From Vitrella brassicaformis CCMP3155 (Eukaryota > Protista > Chromerida), in assembly GCA_001179505.1 (NCBI GenBank), contig CDMY01000791.1, forward strand, positions 62,001 to 126,000: a stretch of DNA of 64,000 nt, written 5' to 3'. The notes below the pieces were generated by a model. That model searched no databases. It had not been told where the DNA came from and saw only the letters and a list, made by a program, of their open reading frames with translations. The translations under genes and the position numbers were made by a program. The first letter of the stretch is position 1, and each line of letters begins with the position of its first letter. This document shows positions 32,313-53,300 of the stretch, one piece after another.

Positions 32313-35300
32313 ATGGAAGAGCCTTTCCCTCGCGCATCTGACGATGTTGCCCACCAGCCTGGTGTCCCCCCTCCCCACGCCCCCTCCCCATCCCCCTCTC
32401 ACCAATTCCCCGCCCCGCCCCCCGCCAGCTTCTTCGCCACCCTGCAGCGATGGGCCTACGAGGTGCCGGACCGCATCGCCTTCCAGTGGCTGGGGCTCGA
32501 CGGCCAAGAGCAGCACCGGCTGACGTATGGAGCGCTGATTGAGCACGTGCGCAAGACGGCATGGTATCTGGAGCACACGTTGGGTCTGGGCAAGGGCGAC
32601 AGGGTGCTGCTGTGCTACCCACCGTCCAACGACTTCACGGTGCCCTTCATGGCCTGCCTGGCCACCGGCATCATCGCCGTGCCCGTCTACCCGGCCGACC
32701 CCAAGAAGCCCAAGGAGGTGCAGCGGCTGCTGCGGGTGGCAGCATCGGCGCGCACCAAGCACGCCCTCACCAACACATCCTACCACCGCATGATCACACT
32801 CGCAGCGGGGCTGGGAGGCCTCGCGGGAGGGCAGGGGGAGGGCCTCCAGCAGCTCAAGTGGACCGTCACCGACACCGTCACACGGACAGTGGGGCGCGAC
32901 GAGTCCGTTGCGTGGCGGCCGGCTGATTTGGAGCCATCCGAGGTGGCCTTCCTGCAATTCACATCGGGGTCCACCAGCGACCCCAAGGGCGTCATGGTGA
33001 CGCACGGCTCCCTCGTCTTCAACGTCCACGTGTGCAGCATGACCTTCGGATTCGCCAACGACGTGGAGCGAAAGGCGCACACAGAGGCCCAGCAGCAGCA
33101 GCAGAGGGACAGAGGTGAGAAGACGGCCACGGCGGCGGCGTCGCCTGTCCCCTTCCTCTACATGGACGGCGATTACCCCCTCGACAAGCTGCAGGCGTAT
33201 TTGCGTGAGCGGCATGCCCTCTCCCAGCAGGTGCTCGGCCACCCGTGTCGGGCATTCAGCTGGCTGCCCATGTACCACGACATGGGGTTAGTGGGGTTCG
33301 TCCTCAGCACCTCGTTCAGCGGCCTCGAGACCTACCTGATGTCACCGCTGGACTTCATCAAGCGCCCTCACGCGTGGCTGCACCTGATGAGCCGCTACCA
33401 GTGCATCGCGTGTGCGGCGCCCAACTTCGCCTTCGACCTGGTGTGCCGCAAGATGCCCGATGAGATCTTCAACTCGCTGGACTTCCGGTGGGTCAGCCAG
33501 GGGGGCTTCCTGTGCGGCGCAGAGCCCATCAGAGACAAAACCGTCAAGAGATTCCTCAAGGTAAACAGAGAGAGAGGAGGGAGGGAGGGAGGGCACACGA
33601 ATGTTCTTTCGCAAACCTCACGTCTCCTCTGTGTGTGTGTCTATGCAGCGTTTTGCGTCCAAGGGAGTGAAGCCATGGAGTTTCCTCCCGGCGTATGGCC
33701 TGGCCGAGAACACCCTGCTCGTGACGGGGAAGCGGGAGTTCCACCAGGGGCCGCTGTTTCTCACTGTCGACAACGAGGAACTGACACACAATGGACGCAT
33801 CGTCGTGGTGAGCAAGCAATGATCAAGGATGCAACCATGGGCAAGAAGACGCTGCTCAACATTTGTGTGTGCCGTCAGGTTCGTGAGGAGAGTTTGAGTG
33901 ACAGCGATGTCAATCTGGCGGACTGGGACGACGTGGCTGAAGAGCCGTCGGCCCGCCTCAAGACACTGGTCGGCTGCGGGCAGCCCGTGCAGGGCACCGA
34001 TGTGCGCATCGTCGACCCAGAGACCCTCAACGAGGTTCATGAGGAGGGCAAACACGGAGAGATATGGGTCATGTCAAGAAGGTGAGTCGAGTGAAGACAC
34101 AACCACAGCAAAAGACACACACCCACATGTGTAATATGGGTACTGCACCTCCTGTCTGCCTCTGTTTGTTTGCATTGATCAGCAATGCGTTGGGCTACTG
34201 GGACCAGCCCCAGCAGACTGAGGAGACGTTTCGTGCCCAGTTCTCACAGTCGACAGGCGAGCTGTCTGCGCGTCGGTTCCTCCGCACTGGCGACTTCGGG
34301 TTTCTGTGGAAGGGCATGCTGTTCGTGACGGGTCGCATGAAGGACATGGTGATAGTCCGCGGCCGCAACTACTACCCACAGGACGTCGAGGAGGCAGTGG
34401 AGGGATGCCACGAGGCCATCAGGCCAGGGTGCTGCGCGGCCTTCTCGACCGACGCCAATGGCACCACCACCACAACAGCAGCGGCAGCGGGCGAGTGTCA
34501 GGGTGAGCTCCTCGTGGTGGTCGCCGAGGTCAGAAACGCCGAGGCGTCGTGGTACAGCCGGCTCTTCCAGCGCGTCAAGAGAGACGAGTACACGGCCATC
34601 TGTGAGGCCATCTGCCGGGCGGTGCAGACGCAGGTGGGCCTGCCGGTCGCCAGGGTGATCCTTCTCGCCCCACGTACCATCCTCAAGACATCAAGCGGCA
34701 AGATCCAGCGGCAGCGCACCAAGGCTGAGCTCACTGACGGCCAACTCAAGGGCATCGTGTTCCAGTACGAGAACGACCACTCTGCGAGCGGATCCATGCA
34801 GCAGCAGCCGCACCCCGCCAGTGGAGGGGATGATGGAGGAGTCTGTGACGCACACGAGGCGTCCTCCCCGTCGGTGCCCACTGACGGAGGTGAGGTGGCC
34901 AGCGGCAACGTCAACCACCCACACGGAGGACCGGGCCACCTCCACACGTCCCTGTCGTCGACCAGACTGGTCGGTGAGTCGGCAGCGACGGATGACGGTG
35001 CGCCGGAAACGCCAGAACCCACTGAAGGAGGCGAGTGCGTCACGGCTCCGCAACAAATCATCCGCGTGTCTCAGCGAGAGATCCAGGAGGTGATAGTGTC
35101 TGCGCTTGGTGAGATCGTCCGTCTGCCCGACCGCCCCGGCCTCGACTGCCCCCTGCACGAGCTGGGCATCGACTCGATAGCCGCGGTCAACTTCTGCAAC
35201 CTGCTGGGCAAGCGGCTGTCGCGAGACTTCCCTGCGACGCTGCTGTTCGACTACCCGACGATCCGCGACCTGACCAACTACATCATGGAGGACGAGGAAT

Positions 35301-38300
35301 GCGGGCGGGCGGGGGGCTGGTCACCCGCTGGTGGCACCAACAGACGCGCATGGATTGCTGCGGACTCGTCTGCCGAGGACAGGGGCATCGCCGTAGTGAG
35401 CACTGCGTGTCGCTTCCCCTGCGGCGTGTCGTCGAGCAAGCAGTTCTGGGAGTTCCTCATGGATGGGTGCGACGGTATCACAGCGGTGCCTCTCAGTCGG
35501 TGGGACATGCACGTCTACTACGACGGGGAGGGGGACAACACGGGCGACCGGTGCTACGTGCAACACGGGGGCTTCATCGAGGACATCGAGTTCTTCGATG
35601 CGGGCGTGTTCGGCATTGCCACAGCAGAGGTGTGGAGCATGGACCCACAGCAACGGTGTGTGCTGGAGGTCGGCTACGAGGCCCTTCACGCAGCAGGATT
35701 CACCAGAGAGAGCCTGCTGGGGGGCGACACGGGCGTCTTCGTCGGCTGCTGCTCGTTCGACTGGAGCAACATGATGCACAAGTGCATCGCTCACGCCAGC
35801 CCCTTCAGCAGCACAGGGAGTGCGGCCAGCATCCTGGCCAACAGGATGTCGTACGTCTTCGGTCTGAAGGGTCCGAGCATGACCATCGACACGGCCTGCT
35901 CGTCCTCGCTCGTCGCCGTCGATATGGCCTCCCGCCACCTGTTGCGAGGCTATGGCAAGGCCGTCATGGCTGGCGGCGTCAACCTGATGCTCGCTCCCCA
36001 CTCATTCATCGCCTTCTGCAAGGCGGGCATGCTGGCGCCCGATGGCAAGTGCAAGACCTTCGACGAGGCAGCCAACGGATACTCGCGTGGTGATGGGTGC
36101 GGCATGGTGGTCATGAAGCGCCAGAGCGATGCCAGAGACAATGAAGATGACATTCTGGCGGTGCTGAGGGGGTCAGGGGTCAACCAGGACGGCAGATCGG
36201 CATCGCTCACCGCACCCAACGGCCCATCACAGCAGCGATGCATCCGGGCGGCCCTCGACGATGCGGGTGTCGGGGCGTCCGAGATCTCTTTTGTCGAGTG
36301 CCATGGCACCGGCACGCCTCTGGGCGACCCCATGGAGGTCCGCTCGCTGCACGCCGTCTTTGCCAAGGCTGCTCGCACCGCGCCGCTGGTGCTGGGTGCC
36401 GTCAAGACCAACGTCGGCCACTCGGAGGGCGCGTCGGGCATCGCCGGCCTCATCAAGACTGTCCTGGTGTTGCAACATGGGCAGGTCCCGCCCAACCTGC
36501 ACTTCAAGCAGCTCAATCACCACATCGCCAGCCTCCTCCAGGGCTTCCCCGTCCACTTCCCGGCCAAGGCCACCCGACTGGCTGCCGTTAAGGGGCAGAG
36601 GCTCAAGGCTGGCGTGCAGTCATTCGGCTTCGGTGGCACGAACGCCCACTGCGTGCTGGAGCAGGGGGACGGAGCATCGAGCACCAAGAAGCGTTCACAG
36701 CTGAGGGGAGATCGTCCTGTTGTCAGCTTCCTGTTCGGCGGAGAGGGCCATGCGCAAGTGGGCATGCTGCAGCAGCTCTACGAGACGGAGGACAGCTTTC
36801 GATCAGCACTCGACCGGTGCGACGGGATCCTGAGAAGCGCTGGTCAAGCGTCTCTTCTCACCACCCTCTACCCCACCCAGCCGCCCCTGCAGTCGTCAGC
36901 TCCCCCCTTGTCGTCGTCGCCAAGCAAGGATCAGTCCCACCCGCTGTCGCTGGACGATCCTCTGGTGGATTTCCCCGCCACCGTGTCCGTGGAGTATGCC
37001 CTGGCGGAGCTGTGGCGGTCGAGAGGTGTGATGCCCGATGTGGTTGTGGGACATGGGGTGGGAGAGCTTGCTGCCGCTGTTGTTGCCAATGTGATGCCAC
37101 TGGATGCGGCACTCACCCTTGCTGTGGAGCAGGCGAAGCTCATCAAAGCGACAGACGTCTTCTTCTCATGCGGATCAGCCAAGGTGGCGGAGAGTGAGGA
37201 GTTCGTGGTCTCGCTGATCATGGATCTCAGCCTGCAGAACAGTGTGGGCGTCGCAGCGACCATTGACGGATGCTCTGTGGTGGTCAACGGCGACATCGAC
37301 GGCCTGAAGACGCTCAAGCAGGCGCTCACTGAGTTGGATCCCCCCGTCCAGTGTGACATCGCTCCCTCCCTCCCATACCATTCTCCCGTCCTCGAGGCCG
37401 CTGCAGAGCAGCTGTCGGATACCATCGATCGGCTTCAAGACCAGCTGTCCGTGCCGTCGTGTTCGCTCGTGTCCACTCTCTCCGGCTTCATGGCCAACTC
37501 GGAGGTGGCCACGGTGGACTACTGGTGTCGGCAGTTCTACCAGACTGTACGATTCCGCGAGGCCATCAAGATGGTGGAAGACCTCAAGTGCAACATCTTC
37601 ATCGAGATTGCTCCCCAAGCCGCTTTGACCGACTTGGCAGCCCAGTCAGTGAGCCGCGACTGCCGTGACGGTTCTATGTGGGTGCCCACGCTCCAGCCTT
37701 CAGTCGAGGGGACCAAAGACAGGAGGCCCTCTGTGAAGTTGCCACGCGCAGAGTCGTTCCAGTCGCTGGCCCGCAGAGTCCAGCAAGCTGTTCGGCGCAC
37801 GTCATCGTCCGTCACATTCAACCGTCAGGCCTTCCCGTGGACCAAAACGGGCCATCCTCTCTTGTCGTCCAGGACTCACGAGCCCGACGGAATGACGGTG
37901 TACACGATGCAGCTGAGTCCCCGTCTCTTCGAGCTCTTCTCGCACCATGAGGTGGCGTCCAAGGCTGTCTTCCCGGCCGCTGGACAACTCGAGATGGTCG
38001 CAGCAGCAGCGCGACTGGATCGCCTGGTGCCAAGTGAGGACGCCGATCGCCCCTCGCTCTTCGACGACTGCCGTCCGGGATCACACCATCTGTGTGTCGA
38101 GCTGCATGACGTGTCCTTTGAGGCGCCCATCGTTATGGACGAGGAGGAAGGCACAATGCAGCCCCTGAGGTGCCAGCTCAAGGACGGCCGCTTTGCTATC
38201 ACGACGATCAAGGTCACCGACGGAAGTGAGTTCATTCATGCGTCGGGATCCGTGGACGTCGCACTCGAGTCCCTTCACGATGACTTTCCCGTGTCCCACC

Positions 38301-41300
38301 ACCAAGTCGACCCGAAGACTCTGCAGCAAGAGACGTGCACTGAGCCAGTCGACATCCCCCACTTGTACGAGGGCCTCCGAACCAACGGCCTCGTGTACGG
38401 CCCCCGCTTCAGGACCCTCAGGCAGGCCTGGGTGGGCACAGGCGACACGCGGGGGCAGGGCCTGGGGCTGGTGCGGCACGGAGGGGCTGGGCTGGAGCTG
38501 TTCGAGCGGCTGTTCGGCTTCCACCCAACCATTCTCGACGGCAGCCTGCATGTGGTGGCTTGCATCCTCGCAGCAGAGATGGCGCCGCCCAATGTGAAGG
38601 AGAGGGAGGATGCCGAGGACGACGACGGTGAGATGAAGCCCGCCACCCTGCACTACGATGGCATCTTCGTGCCCAGCTCCGTCAAGCGAGTGTCCATTGG
38701 GTCAGCCCCCCTCGGCGACAGTGTGTGGTCTCACGTGAGAGTGAGGCCTCAGGCGTCCGGGGACATCATGAGCCTCGACGTCACAACTCTCGTCGCAGAT
38801 GTGACTCTTCTGACCGATAGCGGATCGGTGCTGGGCGAGATCGAGACTTTGACGCTGAGGAAGTTGCACAGCACGAGCAAGATCTCTTACGCCATGCCCA
38901 AGGACGCCCTGTGGACGGTAGCGTGGGTGCCTGTGCCTGACCCGAGTGACGCATCATTGGCACAGCAGCGGCATGGGCCGGATGCCAGCAGTCCCTCCCT
39001 CTCTCCGGCCCCTCCCCGCTATCTGTTGATCGGTCTCGACGACACTCAAGCCGCCCAGATCAAGGAGGACCTGCAGGGTGTGGTCGACATCGTTGCTGTG
39101 CCGGACTGCAAGACTGATGCCGACGTCGGCCGGGTGATGGCGACAGTGCGCGAGGGCAGCTTCAGCAGAATCATCTATGCGGCGGCACTCGTGCTTGGGG
39201 CAAGTGTTGTTGATGTGTTGGATGGAGCGTTGAGACTGGTCAAGGCCCTTGCGAGTGACGAGAGTGGTGACAGCTACGCGAGTGCCACACCCACATTCAG
39301 TCCCAGCACCCTACAAGACAACATCTCCCCTGCTGCGCCGCCAGTCCGCTCTCACACACCTCGTCTGATCCTCTTGAACCAAGAGTCCGATCCCGTGTCC
39401 GTCGGCGCACACATGGCTCCTGCCGGTCTGTGGGGCTTCACTCGGGCGGTCAACGCGGAGCTCGCCGGTGTCCTCGAAGTTGAGTGCCTTGACGTCAGCA
39501 TCATGTCGCGGACGGACCACCACGACACATGGACAGAGGCACATGGCCTGACAGATGTCGCAAAGAGGCTCCGCAAGGGTGTGGAGGCGCTGGAGCACTC
39601 GGGCCAGCAGACCCTGGCGATCCGTCACGACAAGGCATTCGCCCCGCGCCTTGTCCGTCTTCTCGATGACCCCACGGGTGCTGTCGAGTGGTCGATGCAG
39701 CGGAGAGGGGCCCTTACCAATCTCAGAAGGCGGAAGCAACCTGTTGCCTCACGCCCACCTCCACAAGGCAGCCAAGTGGAGTTGCGTGTGTGCGCGGTTG
39801 GTTTGAATTTCCGCGACGTGTTGAATGTGATGGGACTGTATCCGGGCGACCCCGGGCCGCCGGGCAGCGACTGCTCGGGCATCGTCACGCGACTCGGACC
39901 AGACGTCACCGGCGCCACTCAGCACCATCCGCACTTCCGAGTGGGCGACGAAGTGCTGGGCATTGCGGCGGGCTGCCTCAAGACCTACGCCACGACGAGC
40001 TGCCTGCTGCTGACACACAAACCGATCAGTATGACCTTCGAGCAGGCCGCGGCGCAGCCCGTTGTCTTCACGACCGTGCAGCATGCCCTCGGAGACCTGG
40101 CGCAGCTCAAACAAGGCCAGAACGTCCTCATCCACGCGGCCACGGGCGGCGTCGGCCTCACGGCCGTCAACTACGCCAAGCGAGTCGGGGCGACCGTTTT
40201 CGCCACGGCCGGCAGCCAGGAGAAACAAGACTACCTGCGATCTCTCGGCGTCCAGCTCGTCGCCAGCTCCAGAGACCCGAAGGTGAGTCAGTCCATTGCA
40301 TGAGGGTGTGGTATGAGACGGCTGTCATCCTCCTTGTGTGTTGCCTGCTGCTGCTCGTCAGGTGTTCCGCGATGCCCTCGTCTCGTGGACTGGCGAGCAC
40401 GGCTTTGTCAACACGGTCCTCAACTCGCTGTCTGGCGACTTCATCAAGGCCTCCCTCGACGGCCTGCGGCAAGGCAGCGGCGGCACCTTCATCGAGCTCG
40501 GCAAGCGGGGCATCTGGACAGCGGAAGACGTCGCTGCCAAGTACTCACACGTCACCTACCATGTGGTGGCCATCGACGACACCATCGAGCAGCAGCCGGC
40601 GGACTTCCAGACCCTGTTGTCCCGCATCCACAGCCCTCTCGCCGACGGACAGGGCAGGTTGTCCGATCTGCCGCTGACTGAGTTCGATCTGGAGATGGAG
40701 GGAGTCGAGGCCTTCCAGTACATGCAGAGGGCCAAACACATCGGCAAGGTCTGCCTCCGACTACGGAGCTGCTTCGACCCACCGCCCCCATCGCCATCCC
40801 AGGCACTGCTGCAGGGCAAGAAGCTCCACGCGACACTTGAGGATCGTGTGTCGGACGTGTTGGATGGGTGTCAAGACCAAGTGTCAAGCTGGATCCAGGG
40901 CATGAAGGAGCTCGATGACATCTGTGTGAGCCTCGTCAACAATGCCCTGTCGCGGCTGTCCGAGAAGCAGGGCCGTGGGGACCGAGTCGAGGAAGCCACG
41001 CTGCAGCTGCTTCGCGCTCGGCTGTCTGCCATTGATTCCTCGACCGCCTCTGACCTGAGTCGCCCGCAAGGCACCGTCGCTGCTTCCGTGTCGTCTGTCG
41101 AAGATGTTCTGAGGAGGCACAGCGAAGTGGATGCCGAGGCAAAGCTGCTGCAGGCGGTCATGACGCGACTGACCGATGTCATCGACCAAGGCCAATCACC
41201 GTCAGCTGGAGGCCAGAGGGACACTGAGGGCGGTGCAAGTGCTGCCCAGCCTCAAGATGGCAAGGAGGGCCATCTCGTCGACGCGGCCTTGTCTCACGGG

Positions 41301-44300
41301 ATTGAGGATTGTTTGGATGTTTCGCTGTTGACACACACTTGTTGCCGAGTGGCGGCACAGGCCATCAGGGCGATGGAGGATGCATGCTCGTCCGGCCGAC
41401 ATTTGTCGGTCCTCATTGTGGGCCACAGCGTCGGCCACGCCGTCCAGTCCCTCGTCCGCGAAGTGGCCGACCACAACGTCCGCATCACTGTCACCGACAG
41501 GGACTTGCCGTCGCTGCAGAAGGCCGCTGAGAAGCTTCGAGGCCTGCGGAACCTTTCGTTTGCCTTGCTGGATGTGTCAGAGGATCCACGGGCTTACGGC
41601 TTCGGCTCGGCTTCCTTTGAGGCCGTAATCACCGTCAATGCCATCCGGAGCGCTGAGGACTGTGACGCAGCGGTGCGACACCTGAAGGACCTCCTTACCG
41701 ACAATGGTGCCCTCATCCTCACGGAACCAGGCCTCCTCGGGTCGCCTTTCACTGCCCTCACGATGGGTGTCTTCGACTCACACGCTACTCCACATCAGGA
41801 CGGCCTGACGAGGGACTCGATTGAGGCAGTGCTGGAGAAACACGGCCTTGACGCCAGCCTGCCTGGCGGGCAGTCCCGACTCTTCCAGCAACAGCGCCTC
41901 ATCCTTGGCGTCTCTGAGGTCCAGTCTCATGGTCCGCGGTCCACCTCTCCTGCGCATGCGCATGCGCCTGGGGAGTCGTGTTATGTGATCACCGGAGGAT
42001 TCGGCTGCCTGGGTCTGTGGATGGCGCGGCACCTTATCGAGAATGGTGCCCGTCATCTGGCCTTCCTGTCCAGGAGCAATGCTCCAAGAGACGAGTACCG
42101 ACCCGAGTGGGAGGCGCTCCAGCAGAGCAGCGTCACGATCGAAGCCATTCCATGCGATGTGACGGACGCAGGCAGCGTCAGTGCTGCAATGGAGCAGCTG
42201 ATCGACGGCAACTCAAAGCAAAGGCCCCCCGTCAAGGGCGTGTTTCACCTTGCCGGTGCCCTGGCTGACGGCAGTCTGCAGAAACAGACGCGAGAGATGC
42301 TGCAGCTGGTCTTCGATGTCAAAGTCAAGGGAGCCCACAATCTGCACGAGGCGCTGCAAGGCCTTGACGTCGAGTTGGACCACTTCACGGTGTTCTCGTC
42401 CATCACTGGTCTGTTTGGGTCCCTCGGCCAGTCCAACTACGCCGCGGCCAACTCGTGTCTTGATGCCTTCATGGCCTACAGGCGATCGACGGGCTTGTGC
42501 GGGCAGAGCATCCAGTGGGGCCCCGTGGCGCAGTCGGCAATGGCGGGCAGCAAGCGAGTGGAGGAGCTGGTCGCACTACAGGTATGCACACACGGATGCA
42601 TCAGCCAGCCAGACACACACACACACACACACTCACACACATGCATTTTCTTTCCTGCGTGCAGGGGCTGAAGCTGATCGAGAGGCATGTGTTTGAGAGG
42701 GGTTTCTATGCAGCCGTGCGCACCGGTGTCCCCCAGGTGTGCATCGCCCTCATCAACTGGAGGGCCGAGGCGTTCGCGCACCGGCCGTCGGCCTTCTTTG
42801 ATGCCTTCCGCTTGAGTGACAGTGTCGACGCCTCGTTCCACCAGCGACAGACAGACGGTATGCTGACCGGCGACATGGATCCCATCGCCCTGAAGCTCAG
42901 CCGCATCCCTGAACCGGAGCGCAAACAGTGGCTCCAGTCCGTGGTGCTTGACGCCGTCGAGAAGAGCAGCAGCGTCCGGCCGTCTCTCTCCCTGCCTTTG
43001 ATGGAGCTGGGCATCGACTCCCTTGCGGCAGTGGAGCTCCGGAACGAGCTGTCCCGACGGCTGGGCATACGCCTGCCGGCCACCCTGCTCTTCGACTTCC
43101 CCACCGTCGGGCAGATCGTCGACTTTGTGTATGAGGAAGCCATGAAGCAGCTCCACGACGGCATCGCCGAGAAGAGCCCTGGTCAGGCCGCTCTAGGTGG
43201 GCTGGACAAGGGCTCTGGTGCCGATGCCTTGGTCATCAGTGGGATGGACTGCCGGATGCCGGGTTGCGAGGAGTCGCCTGGCGGCTTCTGGCGTCTGTTG
43301 GTCGACCAGGTGGATGCAGTGCGGCCAGTGCCGCTGAGTCGGTGGGACATGGACGAGATCTATGACAGCAACATGGAGGCGGACGGCCGCAGCTACTGCA
43401 AGGAGGCCGCCTTCGTGTCACACGCTGAGCTCTTCGACATGGGCTTCTTCGGCATATCGTCAGCTGAGGCCGAGACCATGGACCCGCAACAAAGAGTCAT
43501 GATGGAGGTCGGCTATGGCGCGTTGCATACGGCCGGCTATCGGCAGCAGAGCGTCTCGGGAAGCAACACCGGGGTCTTCATCGGATGCTGCGGCTACGAC
43601 TGGAGCTACCGACTGGTCGACGCCAAGTCGATTGGCACCTACACCGGCACCGGCGTCGCCGTGTCGATCCTAGCTAACCGCATCTCCTTCGCGCTTGGCC
43701 TTCGCGGCCCCTCATTGACTATCGACACGGCCTGTTCATCGTCCCTGGTAGCTCTCGACGCTGCCTGTCAAAGTCTGCGGTCACACCGGTGCCGCACCGC
43801 CCTGGTGGGCGGGGTGCAGCTGATGCTCAGTGGACAGGGGCTGGTGGTCTTCTGCAAGTCCAAGATGATGTCACCCAGCGGCCGCTGCAAGACATTCGAC
43901 GCCAGTGCCGACGGATTTGGCAGAGGGGAGGGGTGCGGGGCTGTCGTCGTGGAGTCCATGCACTCCCTCACTGACCGGGCGGCAGGAAGACATGCCCTAG
44001 CCATGGTCCGTGGCTCAGCAGTCAATCAGGACGGCCGGAGCGCGACGCTGATGGCCCCCAACGGCCCAGCACAGCAGGACTGCATTCGCCGAGCCCTCCA
44101 GGACGGCGACGTGCGGCCTGAAGACGTGGTATTCATTGAGACCCACGGGACGGGCACGCAGCTCGGCGACCCGATGGAAGTGGGCGCGCTCAAGGCTGTA
44201 TTGGTGGACAACCACAGGTCGAACCATCAGCCGCTCTTCCTCGGGTCCGTCAAGAGCAACATCGGGCATCTTTTCGGGGCTGCAGGCATTGCAGGGCTCA

Positions 44301-47300
44301 TCAAGACCATCCTGGTGTTCCAGCACGGCCAGGTGCCACCCAACGTGCACCTGAAACAGCTGAGCCCCCACCTGGACTTCGACAGTGTCATCACGCTGCC
44401 GACGGGGATGGCTGCACTCCCCACGTACCCGGAGGACAGCGGGCGGAAGTCGATGGGCGGCGTCTCGTCATTCGGCTTCGGCGGGACCAACGCACACGTC
44501 ATCATCTCTGCAGCAGCCGACGGCCCGCGTGACGCAGCAGCACTCACCGCCTTGGTACAGGAGAGGCACATCTTCCTCAATCGGACGTCGTTGCCGTGGA
44601 CCGACGTGTGGCATCCCTTCCTCAAAGAGAAGGCTGCACGGGACGGCCGTACGGCTTACCTGTGTCCCGTCGACGCCAAGGTGTTTGGTGTGGTGTGCGA
44701 CCACGTCATTCTGTCCCGCATCATCTGGCCTGCGGCTGGCTACCTCGAGATGGCGGCGGCGGTTGCACGCGACGCAGATCGCAAAAGGAGGAGGAGCGGC
44801 GTCGTCACGCTTGAGGACGTGAGCATCGACAACCCGCTGCTGCTCAGAAGGCCGCCAGATGACACGGACAGGCAAGCCACCTGGACTGGGCCCGTGCTGT
44901 CGTGCGACATCGATCCAACCGATGGTGCTTTCGAGATGACCGCCAGTGACGAACATCTGGTGGCGGGGAGAGCCCTCATGGATGAGACTGAGGGCGCCGG
45001 GCTGGCGGATATCCCTCCACTCCAAGAGATCCGCCAGCGGCTGACGACCGAGATATCCCCCCATCACTTCTACTCGACCGTGGCAGAGGCGGGGTTGCAG
45101 CTGCAGCGGAAGTTCCAGGTTCTGAAGGAGCTGTACTGGGACCCTTCTTCACTAGAGGTGCTGGGGCGGGCAGAGGTGGACACCGATTTGCACCTGGGCA
45201 CGTCCTTCGAGAGCTCCTTCGGCATCCACCCCGCCCTACTGGACGGCACACTGCAGCTGCCCGCCATGGGCATTCTCGCCACCCCCGAAGGCCACACCCC
45301 TGACTTGTTTGTCCCTGCTGGCATCAAGACGGCCACCATCTCGTTCAAGACGCAGCCGCATTCGCGAACGCTCTGGTCCCATATCAAGGTCGGTGCCCGC
45401 GACACGGAGAAGGGCACACTGGACATCCAGATGACCGTGTGGGATGGCGAGGGCAGGGCCGTGGCTGCCTTCCAGCACTTCACGTACCAACAGGTCAAGA
45501 TGGGACGGACCATGCAGCAGGCCGCCATCCGAGAGCTCCGAGAGACGACCACACTATGGCAGGTCGTCTGGGAACCCCTCAAGGATGGCACCCAGACCAG
45601 GAACACAGAGGACGAGGCAGCTCCAGCAGATCCATCAGCGGAGAAGGGCCACGCTGATCGACCTGTCCTTCTTGTCCTCAGCTCATGCTGTGATCTGGGA
45701 GATGCACCACCTCTGCCCGTGGGAGTGACGACGGTCCACCTCACAGCATCTGACAAACATGGGGGCTACCGCGAGCAGGTGCAGCCCTTCCTGGTGCAGT
45801 CGAGCGACAAGTGGAGGCAATGGGAGGCTGTCATCTTCTCCCCTGGCCCACCCAGCAGCTCGGACAGAGCCACCATGGCGGCGACAGAGAAGATGGTCCT
45901 GTACGAGGCCATCCAGGTGGCGCTTTCGCTCTCAACCAGTACTTCATCCGAAGGCGGCAAGGAGAGCCAGGGACAGCACAACGCAGCCCTGTTCATCGCC
46001 GCCGCAGGCGCACTCCACGGACTCAGCGGCGCGGAACCGCACGAGCCAGTTCATGCCGGTCTGTTGGGTGGCCTCGCCCGCTCCCTCCGCCTCGAGCTGC
46101 CCCAGCTGTCGATCCACACGGTGGGCTTCGACAGGCAGACATGCACTCTACCTCTCATCGTGGACAAGGTTCGGGAGCGGATCGATGCCGGCCTGTCTGT
46201 GGAGTCTGAGCTTGCATGGGGGGACCAGCAGTGGCGAGTGCCCCGGCTGGCCAGCGGGGCGCAGCTGCTCCACAAGGGCGGGGGGATTAAGTGCACTGGG
46301 GCCACCCTGCCGGAACTGAGGGTCGAGCCACTGCTCGACAAGGAGCGGAGGGCACCGGAGGGCGCAGATGGAGAGGTCGAGATCCGAGTGCGTGCCGTAT
46401 GTCTTGTCAAGGACGATGGTGGTCTCGGTGGGGCGACGGGCAAAACCGTCGCAGGAACGGTTGTGGCTCTTCCAGACCTTCCAGACGACGGCTTGGCTGA
46501 CAACAGGCTGCAGGTTGGGGATGATGTCTTCGGCTTCGTCCCCAGCGGTGCCCTTCGGAGCTACGTGACGACACATGCAACGCTGCTGGCCAAGGTGCCC
46601 CCCCAACACCAGCTGTCCTTCGAGCAAATGGCCGCTCTCCCTGCTGCATTCGCCATCACCGACACTGGGCTGAGGGACCTGGCCCAAGTCAAGTCTGGGC
46701 ATAAGGTGCTCATCACGGAGGCCGCAACCGACGTGGGTTTGGCGGCGATTCAGTACTGCCGTCGTGTGGGTGCGACGGTGTATGCGACGGCTGGGAGCGC
46801 CGAGAAGCAGCAGTACCTGCGGTCTCTGGGCGTCGAGTACGTGACGAGCACGCGAGACGTCAGCCGCTTCAAGACCGACATGAGGGCCTTCCTCGGCGTC
46901 CCTCGAGAGGGCGGCGGTGCATTGCCGACCGATGGCGATGCCGGCCTCGACGTCGTCCTCAACTGCCTGTCGCAGGGATCCAATGAAGAAACGTCAATGG
47001 AGTTTCTGCGAGCGGGAGGGTGCGTTGTGGACTGCGGGAATGACAGTCGCGACGGAGAGAGTGGTCGCCGACCTGACGTTCGTTACCACAGACTTGCCTT
47101 CGCTGACCTTCTCGGCAGTGATTCTGGTGTGCTGCGGCAGAAGCTCGATGAGCTTCAGCAAATGCTGAGCGATGGTCGCCTGCAAGCCCTTCCGCTGCGT
47201 GCCTTCGACGTCGACACCAACCAAGCGACAAAGAACGGGCGCTCGGGGGTTGCTGCCGCATTCCAGTGCCTGCAGGAAGCACAGCACATAGGCAGCGTCA

Positions 47301-50300
47301 TCGTGCGCTTCCCAACGTGCTTCGGTTCCTCAAGGATGTTACACGGCGGCTCCCTCAATGGTGTTCACGTGATAACAGGTGGTGTGGGTGGATTGGGTTT
47401 GGTGGTTGCCCGTTGGCTGGTGAGTGAGGGCGTCAAGTCGATAGTGCTCGTGTCGCGCAGGGGCGCCCCGCCGGCCCAGACCGACGCCAAGACCGGAGAG
47501 CCCAACCCCCTCTACACACACTGGCAGTGGCTCACACAATCGGCCGCAAACGTCACAATCAAGAAGGCAGACGTCAGCAACATGGAACACGTGGACTCCT
47601 TGGTTGCTGAGTGTGCCAGCGACGGCATGCTTGGAGGGATATGGCATGCTGCGGGGGTCCTTGCGGACGCGCCTGCAGCTGACCAGACCCTCGAGATGAT
47701 CGGGCGGGTCTTCGACCCGAAGGCTCTCGGTGCGTGGAACTTCCACGATTCGATGGCCAGGCAGGGCGCTGAGTGCGGCTGCCTCATGGCGTTCTCCTCG
47801 GTCACTTCCGTCCTCGGAAACTTTGGGCAGGCCAACTATGCGGCGGCCAACTCGTGCCTCGACGCCTTGATGCACTACAGGGCAACGGTCGCTTCCATCC
47901 AGCAGCAGACTGGCATCTCTGCAGACACGCCTGGCGTGGCCGCTGAGGAGCCCCCAGGCGTCCCTTGCTGCATCAACAAGAGCATCCAATGGGGAGCCTG
48001 GTCCGAGCAGGGCATGGCCCTTGGCACCGTCGATGAGAGGCGGCTGAAGGCCATCGGGATGCGGGGGATCACCAACGAGATGGGACTGCGGATCATCGAC
48101 ACCCTCATCCGCTTCGCTGACCCGATGCCATCCGCGTCAGTGACCCTGGCGCAGCCACTGGACCTGCCCCAATTCCTCAAGGCGAGAGATCACGTGCCTG
48201 CACTGTTCGTGAACCTCGCCCCGAAGAGGCAGGAGGGCTCTGGGAAGACCAAGCGCATCAGTGGTTTCGAGAACATGTCCGCCGAGGACAGATTGCAGTT
48301 CGTGCAGACGACAGTGTCGCAGGCAGCGAAGGATGTGTTGAGCATGCAGGCGGACGAGATGCCCTCCCCGGACACTCCTTTAGGGGAGCTGGGCCTCGAC
48401 AGCCTCTCGGCCGTCGAGTTCAGGAACAGGATCAACGAGCAACTGGGGGTCAAGCTGCCGCCCACCGCCATGTTCGACTTCCCAACCATCACAAAGCTGG
48501 TCGAGTACATCTACGAGGAGGTGTCCCCCGCAGAAGGCACAGATGCGGCCGCAGCTGCCGATACCCAGCTGGCGGATCGGCAATTGCAGGACCAATCTGC
48601 AGTGGGGGTCGGGTTTGCGATCACGGGCATGTCGTGCCGCTTCCCGGGTGGCAGCAACTCGATAGCCGCCTTCTGGCAGGCACTGATGGACAAGAAGGAT
48701 GCGGTAATCCCCATCCCCTTCTCGCGTTGGGACGGTGACGTGGTCTACAACCCCGACATGGACTCGGACGGCCGGTCGTCCTACACGCGCATGGCCTCCT
48801 TCCTCGACCACCCGGAGCGATTCGACTGCACCTTCTTCGGCGTCAGCCGAGACGAGGCGTGGTACCTCGACCCGCAGCAGCGCCTCATGCTCGAAGTCGG
48901 ATACGAGGCCCTCGACCAGGCCGGCCACGACAAGTACGACCTGGCAGGGGAGATGATCGGGTGCTTCATCGGCGTGTGCAACTCTGACTGGGCGGGGGTG
49001 ATGAGAGGGACCAAGGCCACGGCCTACACGGGCACAGCGGTGGCCCTGTCCCTCTGTGCAAATCGCGTGTCATACACCCTGGGCTTGAAGGGCCCCAGTA
49101 TGTGCTTCGACACGGCCTGCTCGTCGGCTCTGGTGGCATGCGATGCGGCCTGCCTTAACCTCCGCGGCGGCCGATGCTCAGAGGCACTAGTTGGCGGAAC
49201 ACAGGTCAGGGAAGTGAGGCAAGTCGGAGGGATAAGCATTAGGAGGCACCCATTGTCTCCTCTTGGATGTAGGTGTTGAGCACGACCCAGACATTCGTGG
49301 CCTTTTCTCAGTCCAAGATGCTGAGCCCTGACGGCCACTGCAAGACCTTCGACGCAGGCGCCAACGGCTTCGGCAGAGGCGAGGGCACGGGAGCTGTCGT
49401 CCTCAGCCGACTGGCCGATGTCGAAAAGGAAGGTCGCCTTATGTGGGGCATTCTCAGAGGCGCAGCGGTCAATCAGGACGGCCGCAGTGCCACTCTGATG
49501 GCACCCAATGGCCCTTCCCAGCAGCAGGTCCTGAGGATGGCTCTCGCTGAGGGCCGAGTCGACCCACGTGACGTCGCCTATATCGAGGCACACGGGACCG
49601 GCACCGTCCTTGGTCAGACCAACACACCACACGCGCTGGCATACATTCAGACGGAACACATACACACGTGGATGCATCTCCGCAACGTCTGCAAACTTTC
49701 CTTCAGGTGATCCAATCGAGCTCGGTGCCTTGCAGACTGTCCTTCCCAGACGGTCCCCCGGGGCGCCCCCCCTGGTGATAGCTTCCGGCAAGACCAACAT
49801 CAACCACCTTGAGGGGTCGGCAGGCATTGCAGGTCTCATCAAGTTGGTTCTGGTGCTTCAGAACCAGATCGCCCCCGCCAACATCCACCTCAAAGCCCTC
49901 AACCCGCTCATCGGAGTCGAAGAGTGGGACGTCGTCTTTCCCACGGAGTGCATGCGACTGACGCCGACGCGACACGACGACAATGGTGCAGCCACCCTGG
50001 TAGGCGGCGTATCGTCTTTTGGCTTTGGCGGCACCAACAGCCACGCCGTGGTTGAGTGCGGCAAGGCCAACACCGCCCTGCCCTTCCACCAACGGCCCAA
50101 GAGGACCATCGCCTTCCTCTTCACTGGCCAGGGCTCGGAGTCCGTGGGCATGTGCCGACAGCTGTACCAGAGAGAGGAGGTCTTCCGCACAGCCATCAAG
50201 CGATGCGCGGCCATTCTGGACAAGCTTCTCCCTGAGCCCCTCATGGCCGTCCTGTACCCGGATGTGCCCAAGAAGGAGATCGACGAGCGCACCAGCCAGC

Positions 50301-53300
50301 TGAAGGCGTCGCGGTATGCCCAGCCCTGTCTGTTTGCCGTGGAGTATGCCATGTGTGAGCTGTGGCGGTCCAAGGGCGTCACTCCTGACGCTGTCATCGG
50401 TCACAGTCTGGGCGAGTACGTGGCGGCCGTCGTGGCCGGCGTCATGAGCCTGGAGGACGGCATCTTCCTGGTGGCTGAGCGGGCCAGACTCATGGCGGAG
50501 CTCCCAGAGCAGGACGGCGCCATGGTAGCAGTACGGGCATCTGAGGAAACCGTGCGCCAGCTCATCGACAAGGAGGGGGCAGGCCAAGAGGTGCAGATCG
50601 GCGCCATCAACGGGCCGAAAAGTGTCGTGTTGTCCGGGAAGAGAGAGGCTGTGTATCGGGTGCTCGACACGGACAAGTCCCTCAGCCGGACTGAGCTGGA
50701 CGTCACTCGCGCCTTCCACTCGCGCCTCATGTCCGACATGTTGGCGCCTTACGAGGAGGCCCTGGGGAGTGTGGAGCTCTCCCAGCCATCAAATGGCGTG
50801 ACATTCGTGTCGACTCTGACGGGCAAGCCTGTCAAGGAGGAGCTGTGCTCGACTGCTTACTTCACGCGACAGATCATGGAGCCGGTGCGGTTCCAGGACG
50901 CCATCACAGCTGCGGCGACCTCCGTTGGGTGCGATTTGTTCCTGGAGGTTGGCCCCACACCCACACTCACTCGGCTGGCGGAGAAGATTCTGGAGACGAG
51001 CAGCGCCACCCCAGCTCTGATCGCGTCCATCAGTTCCAAGGACAGGGAGGCCCCACACAGCGCCTGGAACAGGACCTATGGCCAGGTGATGAGAGAGCAG
51101 GGCATCATCAAGGAGAGGGTGGTACTGCGGCCCAAGGAGTTCCCCTGGGGTCAGCCACGCCACCCCATGGTCGAACAGACCATCGCGGTCGCCAACTCGT
51201 TCTCGCAGAGGAGCGTCATCTACGCCACCAGCCCCCACGGCAGGCCGCAGCCGCTAATCAGGGACCACCTCACACAGAATGAGCGCATCTATCCGACATC
51301 CTTCCTCGTCGAGGCGGCTATGGCCGCGTACGCCCTCTCACAAACAGCACTCGATGAGGAATTCGGTGTGCGGTCGTACCTCGCGGAGGACGCCTGTGTG
51401 TGCGCCATGAACCTGCGAATCGCCCAACACCCTTCAGTCGAGACGCCTCAGCCTGGCCCGTCTCCCTCTCTCGCTCTCGGGGAGACCAGCGACGCCAAAG
51501 ACGAGGCCGCAGCACAGCCAGCGGCCACCCCCGAGGTGTGGCCGACGCTGCCGTCCTTCCCCATCGACGTGCAGCGAGGCGGCACGGTTGTCATCAGAAG
51601 AGACGGATCTAGTCAGGACTCCGACACAGAACAGGGCATCCTCACTGCCGAAGTCAGAGTCGACGAGAGGGTCCAGGAGGACGCAGGGGTGCATATCGGC
51701 TCGCTGGCGTCTCGCTGTCCGATCCACGTGGCTTCCGGTGACTTCTACGCGCTTCTTGGGTCCCTCGGCACAGGCGTTGGGAAGGCCTTTGCCCTTGCGT
51801 CAGGCATTCGGTACGGCGAGAGGGTGATCACAGCAACATTGAGACTTCACGAAGCACGCGACGATCATGAGGCCTTCGAGGAGGGGTTCCTCTTCCACCC
51901 CGCATTCCTGGAGAGCGGCTTCCACCTGACAGCCTTCCTCATGGCGGTCACAGAGCTGGGGGTGGATCCGCAGAAGCCAGCGAGTGCGACGCCTGTAGGG
52001 TACCTCCCGAGGTCTGTGGCGGAGGTCATGATCACCAACATGCCCCTCTGCGAAGGCACCGATACTGAGCTGCTCATCTGTGTGCAGCTGGATGCCCTGT
52101 CCGGGCGTGCCGACATGCACTTGTATCGCCGCGAAGGCGGGTGTGTGGCGTCCATGAGGGGGATTGAGCTGCAGCCCTACAAGGCCACAGTCGAGGAGAG
52201 TCGCGCGGTGGATGCCCTCTGGGATGTCGATTGGGTCTCGCATCCGCATTCACCTGCAGCTGTTGAGAGCAGCGGCGGTGCACCGAAGGATGATTGGGCT
52301 TGTCTGATCTGGGTCAGTGATTCCGAGACGGCGGAAGAGGTCACAAGCGTTCTGCCGCCGTCATCGCCACACCAAGTCGTGAGTGTATCGGACAAGGAGG
52401 CCATGGAGTCGGCTCTCTCACGGCCTTGGGGCGGCATCGTCTGTGCCCTGGGGCTGCAGACCTCACTCGACGATGTCTCTGCGCTGGCCAGCTTGGGCGA
52501 GCTGCTGAGAGACCTCTTCTTGTCGCCTCGGCGCGCCATGGACAAGAGCACAAGCAACCGACGAGAGGTCGCGTCGCTGTACGTCCTGACGTCAGGCGTC
52601 CACATGAGGACGCACGACTCCATCGACTGCTTAGCGAGCTCCATGTGGGGCTTCCTGCGCAGCGCACGAGTGGAGATCGGCTTGGCAGTGCGCCTGTTTG
52701 CACTTGACGTCGATCGAGACCTGACACTGAAAGAGCCACAAGCCATTCTTGACCGTGCGCAGCAAGCACAGCGGATGTTGCAACCTCGCGGCGCAGCGGA
52801 TGACGAGCAGCGCTATGAGGCTGAGATGGCCGTACGTGACGGGCAGTGGTACGTGCCGCGCATTGTGCCCTACGGGAGCACTGCAAGTCGGCTGGCGGCT
52901 CCGCGACAGTGGTGCTTTACGGCGGACAGAAAGGACAAGGGGCAGGCTGTCTTCTCTGGACAGACGGCGAGTGCCGCCGTGTCGGCGATGCCGTCGTCGG
53001 CTGATGGCGATCCGCGAGTGGAGGTGCGAGTGGTCTCATTCGAGATCAGTCCTCAAACTGTTAGCGCACACCTGGAGAAGGATGGACGCACCACCACCAC
53101 CCACCATGCGGCAACATGGCCTTTCTGCGGCATTGTCACCGGCACATCTGCGCCGTGTGGCTTCAAGATCGGGGAGCGTGTTGTTGGAGTCACCCAAGGG
53201 CCCTTCGCGTCACATCTGCTTGTGGACGCCAGAGCCATAGGTCGACGCCCGCCTCTCGTGTCGGATGAGGTGGCGGCCGCAGCTGTGATGCCCCTCCTCG

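What the first reader, a model, noticed from the sequence alone, without database searches (positions are those of the whole stretch)
36715..51050. One intact acyltransferase for three elongation modules
Seen: the module 1 AT has GHGVG (37049-37063) instead of GHSxG, and its start motif FLFTGQG is eroded to FLFGGEG. Module 2 has no AT at all (KS joined almost directly to DH). Only the module 3 AT is canonical (GHSLG at 50399, RAFH at 50708, malonyl-type). All three KS keep the Cys-His-His triad. Inference: the last-module AT loads upstream ACPs within the same chain, or a separate trans-AT or ACP self-acylation supplies modules 1-2. This would be a cis/trans-AT hybrid logic in one eukaryotic polypeptide.
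Basis: partly seen in the sequence, partly recalled or inferred. Interest (0 to 1): 0.75.

Follow-up and report, generated by a model that had tools for sequence, protein, structure and literature searches.

The report
Algal polyketide synthase short of acyltransferases

Summary
One multi-exon gene on the + strand (about 32.3-58.1 kb) encodes FAAL-ACP, then three modules, then a release end:
- Module 1: KS1-AT1-DH-ER-MT-like-KR-ACP
- Module 2: KS2-DH-ER-KR-ACP
- Module 3: KS3-AT3-DH-KR-ACP
- Release: R, plus TE-like exons

**AT1** is a confidently modelled AT fold (pLDDT 90) but is catalytically dead: Ser to Gly (GGG codon, identical in three DNA runs), Arg to Gln, GQG to GEG, and 35 of 85 conserved columns lost.

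**Module 2** has a clean excision the size of an AT. An AT profile finds only AT1 and AT3 in all six frames of the 64 kb.

**AT3** keeps Ser, Arg and His. However, it carries Glu at the Gln position where a Gln-to-His change switches TgPKS2 acyltransferases off, so its activity is not assured.

All three KS keep Cys-His-His. They sit in an alveolate KS clade, not with the cluster of AT-less bacterial KSs.

**Interpretation: partly supported.** Modules 1-2 must receive malonyl from outside themselves, but the donor cannot be decided here. Every proposed route already has a published precedent: AT-less algal and chromerid synthases, embedded ATs shared in a fungal modular PKS, and self-acylating TgPKS2 ACPs. 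This scan also found the same pattern in another gene of this genome.

**Verdict:** a new member of a known kind, of low to moderate interest.

The parts
32330..34081 (+). Exon 1: start of the gene and the AMP-binding (FAAL-type) loading domain
   Evidence: Pfam AMP-binding E 6e-50. A Met stands in frame at about 32.33 kb. Intron 34082-34182 has GT-AG ends.
35090..35284 (+). Loading ACP (ACP0), GIDSI Ser motif at 35165
   Evidence: Pfam PP-binding; motif scan
35381..36658 (+). KS1 with Cys-His-His intact
   Evidence: Pfam ketoacyl-synt E 1e-75; DTACSS 35888, HGTGT 36302, NVGH 36410
36716..37720 (+). AT1: a pseudo-acyltransferase whose fold is kept but whose catalytic residues are lost. Ser to Gly at 37055-37057, Arg to Gln at 37124-37141, GQG to GEG at 36728. 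His is kept at 37373-37384. A Pro/Ser-rich disordered insert lies at about 36872-36985.
   Evidence: Aligns end to end with the CurL AT, E 2e-36. Departs at 35 of 85 conserved columns. AF2 model pLDDT 90.4, and TM 0.84 to 4mz0. Three DNA runs are identical here.
37853..38575 (+). DH1 (HPLL, catalytic His and DxxxH present)
   Evidence: Pfam PS-DH and PKS_DH_N; motifs
39773..40830 (+). ER1, split by intron 40283-40361; NADPH motif HAATGGVG at 40133-40156
   Evidence: Pfam ADH_N, ADH_zinc_N and ADH_zinc_N_2; both exon parts align to ER2; intron
41421..41852 (+). Methyltransferase-like domain between ER1 and KR1, with SAM motif I degenerate (VGHSVGH at 41418-41438)
   Evidence: Pfam Methyltransf_12, E 4e-8, below the family cut-off; sequence
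41979..42581 (+). KR1 (GGFGCLG, YAAAN at 42438); intron 42582-42664 follows
   Evidence: Pfam KR E 6e-60
42899..43141 (+). ACP1, GIDSL at 43010
   Evidence: Pfam PP-binding; motif
43229..44500 (+). KS2 with Cys-His-His intact
   Evidence: DTACSS 43724, HGTGT 44144, NIGH 44258. Closest solved KS is cis-AT CurL at 424 bits, against 299-304 bits for the trans-AT PksL chains.
44498..44611 (+). KS2-DH2 junction: 38 residues where modules 1 and 3 have 401 and 372. It keeps the post-AT 'LPW...HPFL' motif, so this is a clean AT excision.
   Evidence: No AT signal in any frame. The protist-clade proteins P0270 and P0335 show the same geometry.
44612..45496 (+). DH2 (HPFL, His, DxxxQ)
   Evidence: Pfam PS-DH E 9e-23
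46364..47305 (+). ER2; NADPH glycine motif degenerate (EAATDVG at 46718-46738)
   Evidence: Pfam ADH_zinc_N
47360..47887 (+). KR2 (GGVGGLG, YAAAN at 47837)
   Evidence: Pfam KR E 2e-43
48296..48529 (+). ACP2, GLDSL at 48392
   Evidence: Pfam PP-binding
48602..50065 (+). KS3 in three exons (to about 49204; about 49291-49612; from 49707), with Cys 49109, His 49591 and His in NINH at 49796
   Evidence: Exon pieces align in order to KS2; introns; motifs
50108..51061 (+). AT3: the only AT with Ser (GHSLG 50399), Arg (50474-50491) and His (RAFHS 50708). It is malonyl-type but reads GQGSE (50126-50140).
   Evidence: Pfam Acyl_transf_1 E 1e-51
51161..52192 (+). DH3
   Evidence: Pfam PS-DH
53879..54524 (+). 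KR3, split by intron 54236-54324 (YSAAN at 54439)
   Evidence: Pfam KR
55128..56348 (+). ACP3 (GIDSM 55215) and the thioester reductase domain
   Evidence: Pfam PP-binding and NAD_binding_4, E 1e-65
57200..58100 (+). Thioesterase-like exons (GWSFGG at 57255; GGHF further on)
   Evidence: Translations. This is the subject of another finding on this window and was not analysed further.

Best explanation
This is one gene for a reducing modular synthase of roughly 8,000 residues, of the alveolate (chromerid-type) clade. A fatty-acyl-AMP-ligase-type domain loads a starter on ACP0. Three modules extend it, and an ACP-reductase end (with thioesterase-like exons after it) releases it.

Shown here:
- Module 1 keeps a confidently modelled but catalytically dead acyltransferase.
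- Module 2 has lost its acyltransferase by a clean in-frame excision.
- Module 3 holds the only acyltransferase with Ser, His and Arg.
- KS1-3, ACP1-3 and the KR and DH domains of modules 1 and 2 keep their catalytic residues.

Inferred:
- Modules 1 and 2 still elongate, so malonyl must reach ACP1 and ACP2 from outside those modules.
- The most likely donor is AT3 of the same, presumably dimeric, chain, either directly or by relay between ACPs.
- AT1 survives only as a spacer or scaffold between KS1 and DH1.
For: Domain map from Pfam and motif scans.

Seven GT-AG introns of 79-101 nt join the pieces in frame, and each split domain continues in order across them.

AT1 is dead: Ser to Gly, Arg to Gln, Gln to Glu, and 35 of 85 conserved columns lost. 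The GGG codon is identical in three DNA runs. The fold is retained.

Module 2 is AT-less, with 38 residues where the other modules have 372-401, and no AT signal in any frame.

The window holds no standalone AT gene. The only discrete acyltransferase listed for Vitrella in the chromerid survey is the plastid FabD (PMC7464705).

Keeping exactly one AT with catalytic residues, while one decayed and one was deleted, suggests selection for one AT per chain.

Precedent: in the fungal LasC/LasD modular PKS only modules 2, 4 and 7 have ATs, no trans-AT takes part, and malonyl was seen to move from module 2 to another ACP (PMC13749307).
Against: - There is no biochemistry, and no RNA run was found for this stretch. 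Neither expression nor a single transcript is shown.
- AT3 has Glu at the Gln position where a Gln-to-His change abolished activity in TgPKS2 ATs (PMC9301873).
- Earlier notes of this scan report wholly AT-less front ends in other synthase genes of the genome (not checked here). If true, some other general malonyl source must exist, and it could serve this enzyme too.
- No relative of AT1 above 38% identity was found. Whether the dead AT is conserved, and therefore useful, could not be tested.
- ER2 and the MT-like domain also have degenerate cofactor motifs, which could point to wider decay.
Confidence: 0.4

Rival explanations
1. Malonyl is supplied to ACP1 and ACP2 (and perhaps ACP3) by an acyltransferase encoded elsewhere. 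This could be a free-standing cytosolic AT or the AT domain of another of the genome's many synthases, as assumed for algal trans-AT PKS.
For: AT-less modules are the rule in algal multimodular PKS and are read as trans-AT dependence (PMC4661987). The chromerid multimodular enzymes that the survey reads as PKS all have at least one AT-less module (PMC7464705). Earlier scan notes report AT-less synthase front ends in this genome (unchecked).
Against: No AT gene lies in the 64 kb window. The chromerid survey lists only a plastid-targeted FabD as a discrete AT in Vitrella. KS2 is followed directly by DH2 with no linker-domain remnant that could dock a trans-AT. The KSs are not in the cluster of AT-less bacterial KSs. 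No algal trans-AT has been tied biochemically to a synthase in the papers read.
Confidence: 0.27
2. ACP1 and ACP2 load themselves with malonyl from malonyl-CoA without any AT, as reported for three of the four ACPs of Toxoplasma TgPKS2.
For: Self-acylation of TgACP2-4 is described for a related apicomplexan synthase (Keeler et al. 2023, as summarised in bioRxiv 10.1101/2023.05.23.541938). That enzyme also carries an inactive AT (PMC9301873).
Against: No sequence signature for self-acylation could be applied here, because the primary paper is not in the library. ACP1-3 are ordinary in sequence and 47-58% identical to each other. Self-acylation in vitro is usually slow. If it sufficed, keeping AT3 would be unexplained.
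Confidence: 0.13
3. Module 1, module 2 or both no longer elongate (skipped or stalled), or the gene as a whole is decaying. The AT losses then need no compensation.
For: [quoted passage not shown] ER2 (EAATDVG) and the MT-like domain (GHSVG) have degenerate cofactor motifs. No RNA evidence was found.
Against: About 24 kb of reading frame is open, with in-frame canonical introns. KS1 and KS2 keep Cys-His-His, ACP1 and ACP2 keep the Ser, and KR1, KR2, DH1, DH2 and ER1 keep their motifs. That is unexpected for unused modules.
Confidence: 0.12
4. Artefact: a sequencing error in AT1, or an assembly collapse that removed the module 2 AT.
For: Reads were laid only on 36700-42690. The KS2-DH2 junction itself was not covered.
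Against: GGG needs two changes to become any Ser codon, and three runs agree with the window across AT1. AT1 has lost many other conserved residues. The junction lies in an unbroken 2,260-codon ORF and keeps the post-AT motif. Related protist proteins have the same KS-to-DH spacing.
Confidence: 0.02

Closest known systems
Chromerid multimodular FAS-I/PKS-I enzymes (Tomcala et al. 2020, PMC7464705) and algal multimodular PKS with displaced ATs (Shelest et al. 2015, PMC4661987)
   Same: Giant cytosolic multi-module reducing synthases in which at least one module lacks an AT. Some carry an extra methyltransferase-like domain. The KSs belong to a protist clade.
   Different: Those papers catalogue presence or absence of AT by domain prediction. 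They do not describe a retained dead AT beside a deleted one and an intact one. Neither paper, in the parts read, ties a malonyl donor to any synthase by experiment.
Toxoplasma gondii TgPKS2 (D'Ambrosio et al. 2022, PMC9301873; Keeler et al. 2023)
   Same: Apicomplexan-lineage three-module synthase with a loading didomain, a thioester reductase at the end and one inactive AT. ACP self-acylation is offered there as an AT-independent loading route.
   Different: TgPKS2 has an AT in all three modules, all with GHSLG and HAFH, and its dead AT is the last one, silenced by a Gln-to-His change. Here the first AT has lost Ser, Arg and Gln, the second is gone, and the last has Glu at the switch position. 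TgPKS2 ends in KS-TR, whereas this gene ends in ACP-R plus TE-like exons.
Fungal modular PKS LasC/LasD of Lasiodiplodia theobromae (PMC13749307, 2026)
   Same: Eukaryotic assembly line in which only some modules have an embedded AT and no trans-AT takes part. Malonyl was seen moving from an AT-containing module to another ACP.
   Different: It is a two-protein fungal system ending in a macrocyclising TE, in a different lineage, and no dead AT is reported in the text read.
Bacterial trans-AT PKS (for example the bacillaene PksJ/PksL)
   Same: Modules without an integrated AT that depend on loading from outside the module.
   Different: The KSs here score higher to cis-AT KSs (CurL 424-431 bits) than to trans-AT KSs (299-304 bits), and they fall outside the cluster of AT-less bacterial KSs in the tree. 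There is no linker-domain remnant after KS2, no discrete AT gene nearby, and two integrated AT domains remain.
Ser-less AT domains in bacterial cis-AT lines (bengamide, desertomycin, conglobatin, gephyronic acid; listed in PMC9301873)
   Same: An integrated AT lacking the GHSxG serine inside an otherwise working assembly line. One bacterial GHGVG AT was also seen here (P0044).
   Different: In those cases the result is reported as skipping or early termination. Here the downstream reductive domains of the module look intact, and the case is eukaryotic.

Membership tests
Modular type I PKS/FAS-like synthase, alveolate (chromerid/apicomplexan/dinoflagellate) clade | KS domains with the Cys-His-His triad | tested here: met
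   All three KS
Modular type I PKS/FAS-like synthase, alveolate (chromerid/apicomplexan/dinoflagellate) clade | KS groups with protist KSs in a tree | tested here: met
   KS1, KS2 and the KS3 N-terminal part fall in a clade with SH-aLRT 99 that also holds KSs of a dinoflagellate (P0020) and a gregarine (P0318). This is a quick IQ-TREE run, not the finished careful search.
Modular type I PKS/FAS-like synthase, alveolate (chromerid/apicomplexan/dinoflagellate) clade | Several modules on one polypeptide | tested here: inconclusive
   In-frame GT-AG introns and domain continuity support one CDS. No RNA was available, and the joined protein was not built.
Canonical cis-AT modular PKS | A catalytically competent AT in every elongation module | tested here: not met
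   AT1 is dead and module 2 has no AT
Canonical cis-AT modular PKS | KS-AT linker domain of about 100 residues | tested here: not met
   About 25-28 residues between KS and AT in modules 1 and 3, against a median of 107 in 741 KS-AT pairs of the proteins retrieved by the searches, mostly bacterial
Bacterial-type trans-AT PKS | KSs belong to the trans-AT KS clade | tested here: not met
   PDB bit scores favour cis-AT KSs. In the tree the window's KSs lie outside a well-supported clade made up almost entirely of bacterial KSs that have no AT after them; I read that clade as trans-AT type, but it was not confirmed against known trans-AT KSs.
Bacterial-type trans-AT PKS | Discrete AT gene with the synthase | tested here: not met
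   No AT outside AT1 and AT3 in the six frames of the 64 kb. The rest of the genome was not searchable.
Bacterial-type trans-AT PKS | No integrated ATs | tested here: not met
   AT1 (dead) and AT3 are integrated
TgPKS2-type apicomplexan PKS | AT silenced by Gln to His in GQGSQ while GHSxG is kept | tested here: not met
   AT1 lacks Ser, Arg and both Gln. AT3 has Glu, not His, at that position.
TgPKS2-type apicomplexan PKS | Self-acylating ACPs | not testable with these tools
   Needs biochemistry; the primary paper is not in the library
TgPKS2-type apicomplexan PKS | KS-TR release didomain | tested here: not met
   The end here is ACP-R followed by TE-like exons
AT-poor chromerid multimodular synthases (PMC7464705) | At least one module without an AT in a giant multimodular enzyme | tested here: met
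   Module 2
AT-poor chromerid multimodular synthases (PMC7464705) | Encoded by Chromera or Vitrella | tested here: inconclusive
   Earlier scan notes name Vitrella brassicaformis. Here there are only coded run labels from 2012-2015, marine sediment metagenomes and an AP2 neighbour note. No named protein hit was obtained.
Modular PKS with embedded ATs shared between modules (LasC/LasD type) | Only a subset of modules has an AT, and no trans-AT is in the locus | tested here: met
   (locus means this window only)
Modular PKS with embedded ATs shared between modules (LasC/LasD type) | Malonyl shown to pass from an AT-containing module to another module's ACP | not testable with these tools
   Needs in vitro transfer assays

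The most novel reading that the evidence does not exclude
A single embedded acyltransferase (AT3) feeds all three elongation ACPs of an 8,000-residue eukaryotic assembly line. The dead AT1 is kept under selection as a pseudo-enzyme scaffold or docking surface. This would be a natural, minimal model of AT sharing within one chain, in a clade whose KS-AT pairs also lack the usual linker domain.
Probability: 0.3. Interest if true: 0.5.

Novelty: new member of a known kind. Interest (0 to 1): 0.25.

Why it matters
How AT-less modules of eukaryotic assembly lines obtain their extender units is still poorly tested. That includes the giant algal toxin synthases and the apicomplexan synthases that have been proposed to make oocyst-wall lipids.

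This gene offers a compact test case, with one dead, one deleted and one apparently live AT in three modules. AT sharing, trans loading and ACP self-loading could be compared using a handful of recombinant domains.

As a discovery it adds little. The design is already catalogued in chromerids and algae, has experimental precedents in Toxoplasma and a fungus, and was met by this scan in another gene of the same genome.

Tried and rejected
**1. Orthologues or paralogues of AT1, to test whether the dead state is conserved.** None of these found a relative above 38% identity, so no dN/dS or conservation test was possible:
- a word search limited to proteins of 1,143-3,638 aa
- an exhaustive HMMER search of 1.84 billion representatives
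- a metagenome contig scan

The window's own annotated protein did not appear either.

**2. Relatives of the KS2-DH2 junction.** The hits were distant, 26-29% identical where most of the region aligned. Among them were a gregarine protein and two unnamed AT-less proteins, which were used in the tree.

**3. RNA evidence.** No RNA holder of the stretch was found. The runs laid were DNA contigs, so expression, splice joints and a single transcript are not shown.

**4. Naming the organism.** An exact-product look-up of a neighbouring ORF found nothing.

**5. The primary TgPKS2 ACP self-acylation paper.** It is not held in the library, so no self-acylation signature could be applied to ACP1-3.

**6. 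The 527-551 bit matches to the trans-AT bimodule 7zma.** I rejected these as a sign of trans-AT ancestry. The whole-sequence score appears to sum that chain's two KS domains (two matched stretches are listed for KS2), and the single-KS chain of the same protein scores 275 bits, below CurL.

**7. The careful tree search.** It did not finish in the time allowed, so the quick IQ-TREE result is reported.

**8. The joined protein.** The joined full-length protein was not built, searched or folded.

Full report
**What is there**

The + strand between about 32.3 and 58.1 kb carries a run of long ORF pieces. Their Pfam content reads, in order:
- AMP-binding (FAAL type) and ACP
- KS-AT-DH-ER, a methyltransferase-like stretch, KR, ACP
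- KS-DH-ER-KR-ACP
- KS-AT-DH-KR-ACP
- NAD_binding_4 thioester reductase, followed by thioesterase-like exons (GWSFGG at 57255)

The pieces are joined by seven canonical GT-AG introns of 79-101 nt that restore the frame:
- 34082-34182
- 40283-40361
- 42582-42664
- about 49205-49290
- 49613-49706
- 54236-54324
- 54525-54621

The domains they split (ER1, KS3, KR3) continue in the right order across them when aligned to the unsplit copies in module 2. This supports one coding sequence of roughly 8,000 residues. It is an inference from DNA only. No RNA run holding the stretch was found, and the four runs laid were DNA contigs.

**The observation**

*AT1 (36716-37720).* It aligns end to end with the acyltransferase of the CurL KS-AT didomain (E 2e-36). 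In that alignment:
- The nucleophile Ser is Gly. The codon is GGG at 37055-37057, two changes from any Ser codon.
- The carboxylate-binding Arg is Gln.
- GQGSQ reads GEGHA.
- The catalytic His is kept.

Against 39 other ATs, AT1 departs from 35 of 85 columns that are at least 87% conserved. AT3 departs from 13, and most of the bacterial ATs from 5 or fewer. Of 191 AT domains in the proteins found, 174 have GHSxG and one other (a bacterial MAG) has GHGVG. Contigs of three runs lie on AT1 without a single difference.

An AlphaFold2 model built with that alignment is confident (pLDDT 90.4, pTM 0.89) apart from a Pro/Ser-rich insert. It superposes on the CurL AT at TM 0.84 and rmsd 1.8 Å. The alignment of active homologues favours such a result. 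AT1 is thus a confidently modelled but catalytically dead AT.

*Module 2.* There are 38 residues between the GTNAH end of KS2 and the HPFL start of DH2, against 401 in module 1 and 372 in module 3. The difference is the size of an AT. The 'LPW...HPxL' motif that follows the AT in modules 1 and 3 is still there. A profile built from the 40 ATs finds only AT1 and AT3 in all six frames of the whole window at E up to 10. There is therefore no AT remnant in module 2 and no free-standing AT gene within 64 kb.

*AT3.* It has Ser, Arg, His and a malonyl-type RAFHS. It reads GQGSE, however, and the last position is the Gln whose change to His abolished activity in TgPKS2 ATs (PMC9301873).

*KS and ACP.* All three KS keep Cys-His-His, with KS3's second His in NINH. 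There are four ACPs, each with the Ser motif.

**Do modules 1 and 2 still work?**

- KR1 and KR2 keep the NADPH motif and YAAAN.
- DH1 and DH2 keep HPxL, His and DxxxH/Q.
- ER1 keeps HAATGGVG.

This is what one expects if beta-keto intermediates are still made on ACP1 and ACP2. It argues against simple module skipping, which is the outcome reported for Ser-less ATs in several bacterial lines (PMC9301873). Against this, ER2 reads EAATDVG and the methyltransferase-like stretch reads GHSVG where GxGxG is expected. Some decay of accessory domains is therefore real.

**Where the KSs come from**

- KS1 and KS2 score highest to the cis-AT KS of CurL (431 and 424 bits) and then to DEBS and Lsd14. The trans-AT PksL and PksJ chains reach 298-304 bits.
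- The apparent top hit 7zma appears to be the sum of that chain's two KS domains. The single-KS chain from the same protein scores 275 bits.
- In a quick maximum-likelihood tree of 91 KSs, KS1, KS2 and the first exon of KS3 fall in a well-supported clade (SH-aLRT 99). That clade also holds the KSs of a dinoflagellate protein (Effrenium, P0020), a gregarine protein (P0318) and two unnamed AT-less proteins.
- Inside that clade, KSs with and without a following AT are mixed, and KS2 (no AT) is sister to KS3 (AT).
- The clade lies apart from a well-supported clade made almost entirely of bacterial KSs that have no AT after them, which I read as trans-AT type.
- The gregarine protein itself has a first module without an AT and a second with one.

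AT loss therefore happened module by module inside a cis-AT-derived alveolate lineage, not by descent from trans-AT PKS.

**How it most likely works**

ACP1 and ACP2 must be charged from outside their modules. I put AT3 of the same chain first (about 0.4), for four reasons:
- Exactly one AT with catalytic residues has been kept, while one decayed and one was excised.
- No AT gene lies nearby.
- The chromerid survey lists only the plastid FabD as a discrete AT in Vitrella (PMC7464705).
- A fungal modular PKS with ATs in three of its modules works without a trans-AT and moves malonyl between modules (PMC13749307).

The rivals are:
- An AT encoded elsewhere (0.27). This is the standard reading for algal AT-less PKS (PMC4661987). 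It is favoured if other synthases of this genome are wholly AT-less, as earlier notes of this scan say.
- ACP self-acylation as in TgPKS2 (0.13).
- Non-elongating modules or a decaying gene (0.12).
- Artefact (0.02).

None can be decided without assays.

**Comparison and novelty**

- AT-less modules are called a hallmark of algal multimodular PKS (PMC4661987).
- The chromerid survey says that all the multimodular enzymes it reads as PKS contain at least one module without an AT (PMC7464705).
- TgPKS2 supplies the precedents for an inactive integrated AT and for AT-independent ACP loading.
- LasC/LasD supplies the precedent for embedded ATs serving other modules.
- This scan has already followed up the same pattern (one AT dead, one intact, one deleted) in another gene of this genome, and AT-less modules in others. 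Those notes name the organism as Vitrella brassicaformis, which I could not confirm independently.

The finding is therefore a correct and tidy example of a known design: a new member of a known kind. Two things are modestly new here: the side-by-side dead, deleted and live ATs in a three-module chain, and the Glu at the switch position of the only 'live' AT.

**Limits**

- No orthologue of AT1 was retrievable, so selection on the dead domain is untested.
- The KS2-DH2 junction was not covered by the single read-laying run.
- The tree is the quick version.

Noticed in passing
window 36650-36720 and 50045-50110: KS and AT are joined by only about 25-28 residues in modules 1 and 3. In 741 KS-AT pairs of the proteins retrieved by the searches (mostly bacterial), the median gap is 107 residues (the KS-AT linker domain), and only 11 pairs have under 40. 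Those 11 include the gregarine and dinoflagellate relatives. The alveolate clade seems to lack the usual linker domain.
   Followed up: partly
window 46718-46738: ER2 has EAATDVG where ER1 has HAATGGVG. The NADPH-binding glycines are lost, so module 2 may not reduce the enoyl intermediate.
   Followed up: no
window 41421-41852: A methyltransferase-like stretch sits between ER1 and KR1, which is an unusual position. Its Pfam score is below the cut-off and SAM motif I is degenerate (VGHSVGH). It may be a pseudo-methyltransferase.
   Followed up: no
window 50126-50140: AT3 reads GQGSE. Among the 40 aligned ATs, 36 have Gln at the last position. A dinoflagellate AT (P0020:527-830) reads GMGSH, the same His that inactivates TgPKS2 AT3.
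   Followed up: partly
window 55530-58100: The release end is a thioester reductase followed by exons with thioesterase motifs (GWSFGG at 57255, GGHF later). Another first-stage finding on this window covers it.
   Followed up: no
window 60152-61408 (- strand): A 418-codon ORF next to the synthase has a weak match to the wax ester synthase/DGAT catalytic domain (E 8e-4, below cut-off). A wax synthase beside a synthase that releases an alcohol or aldehyde would make sense, but the match is weak.
   Followed up: no
window 39776-39903 and 42429-42467: Short stretches inside ER1 and KR1 have roughly 3 to 17 times the contig depth of their surroundings in all four runs, with many loose ends. They are probably shared with the genome's many paralogous synthase genes.
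   Followed up: no
window 40008-40577: The runs carry different combinations of single-base variants here (for example 40189, 40198, 40322, 40329, 40410). This suggests alleles or strain differences, or contigs from paralogues. A marine sediment metagenome (X7) holds a slightly diverged version of the gene.
   Followed up: no
window 30093-31067 (- strand): A Ctr-family copper transporter ORF lies directly upstream of the synthase on the opposite strand.
   Followed up: no
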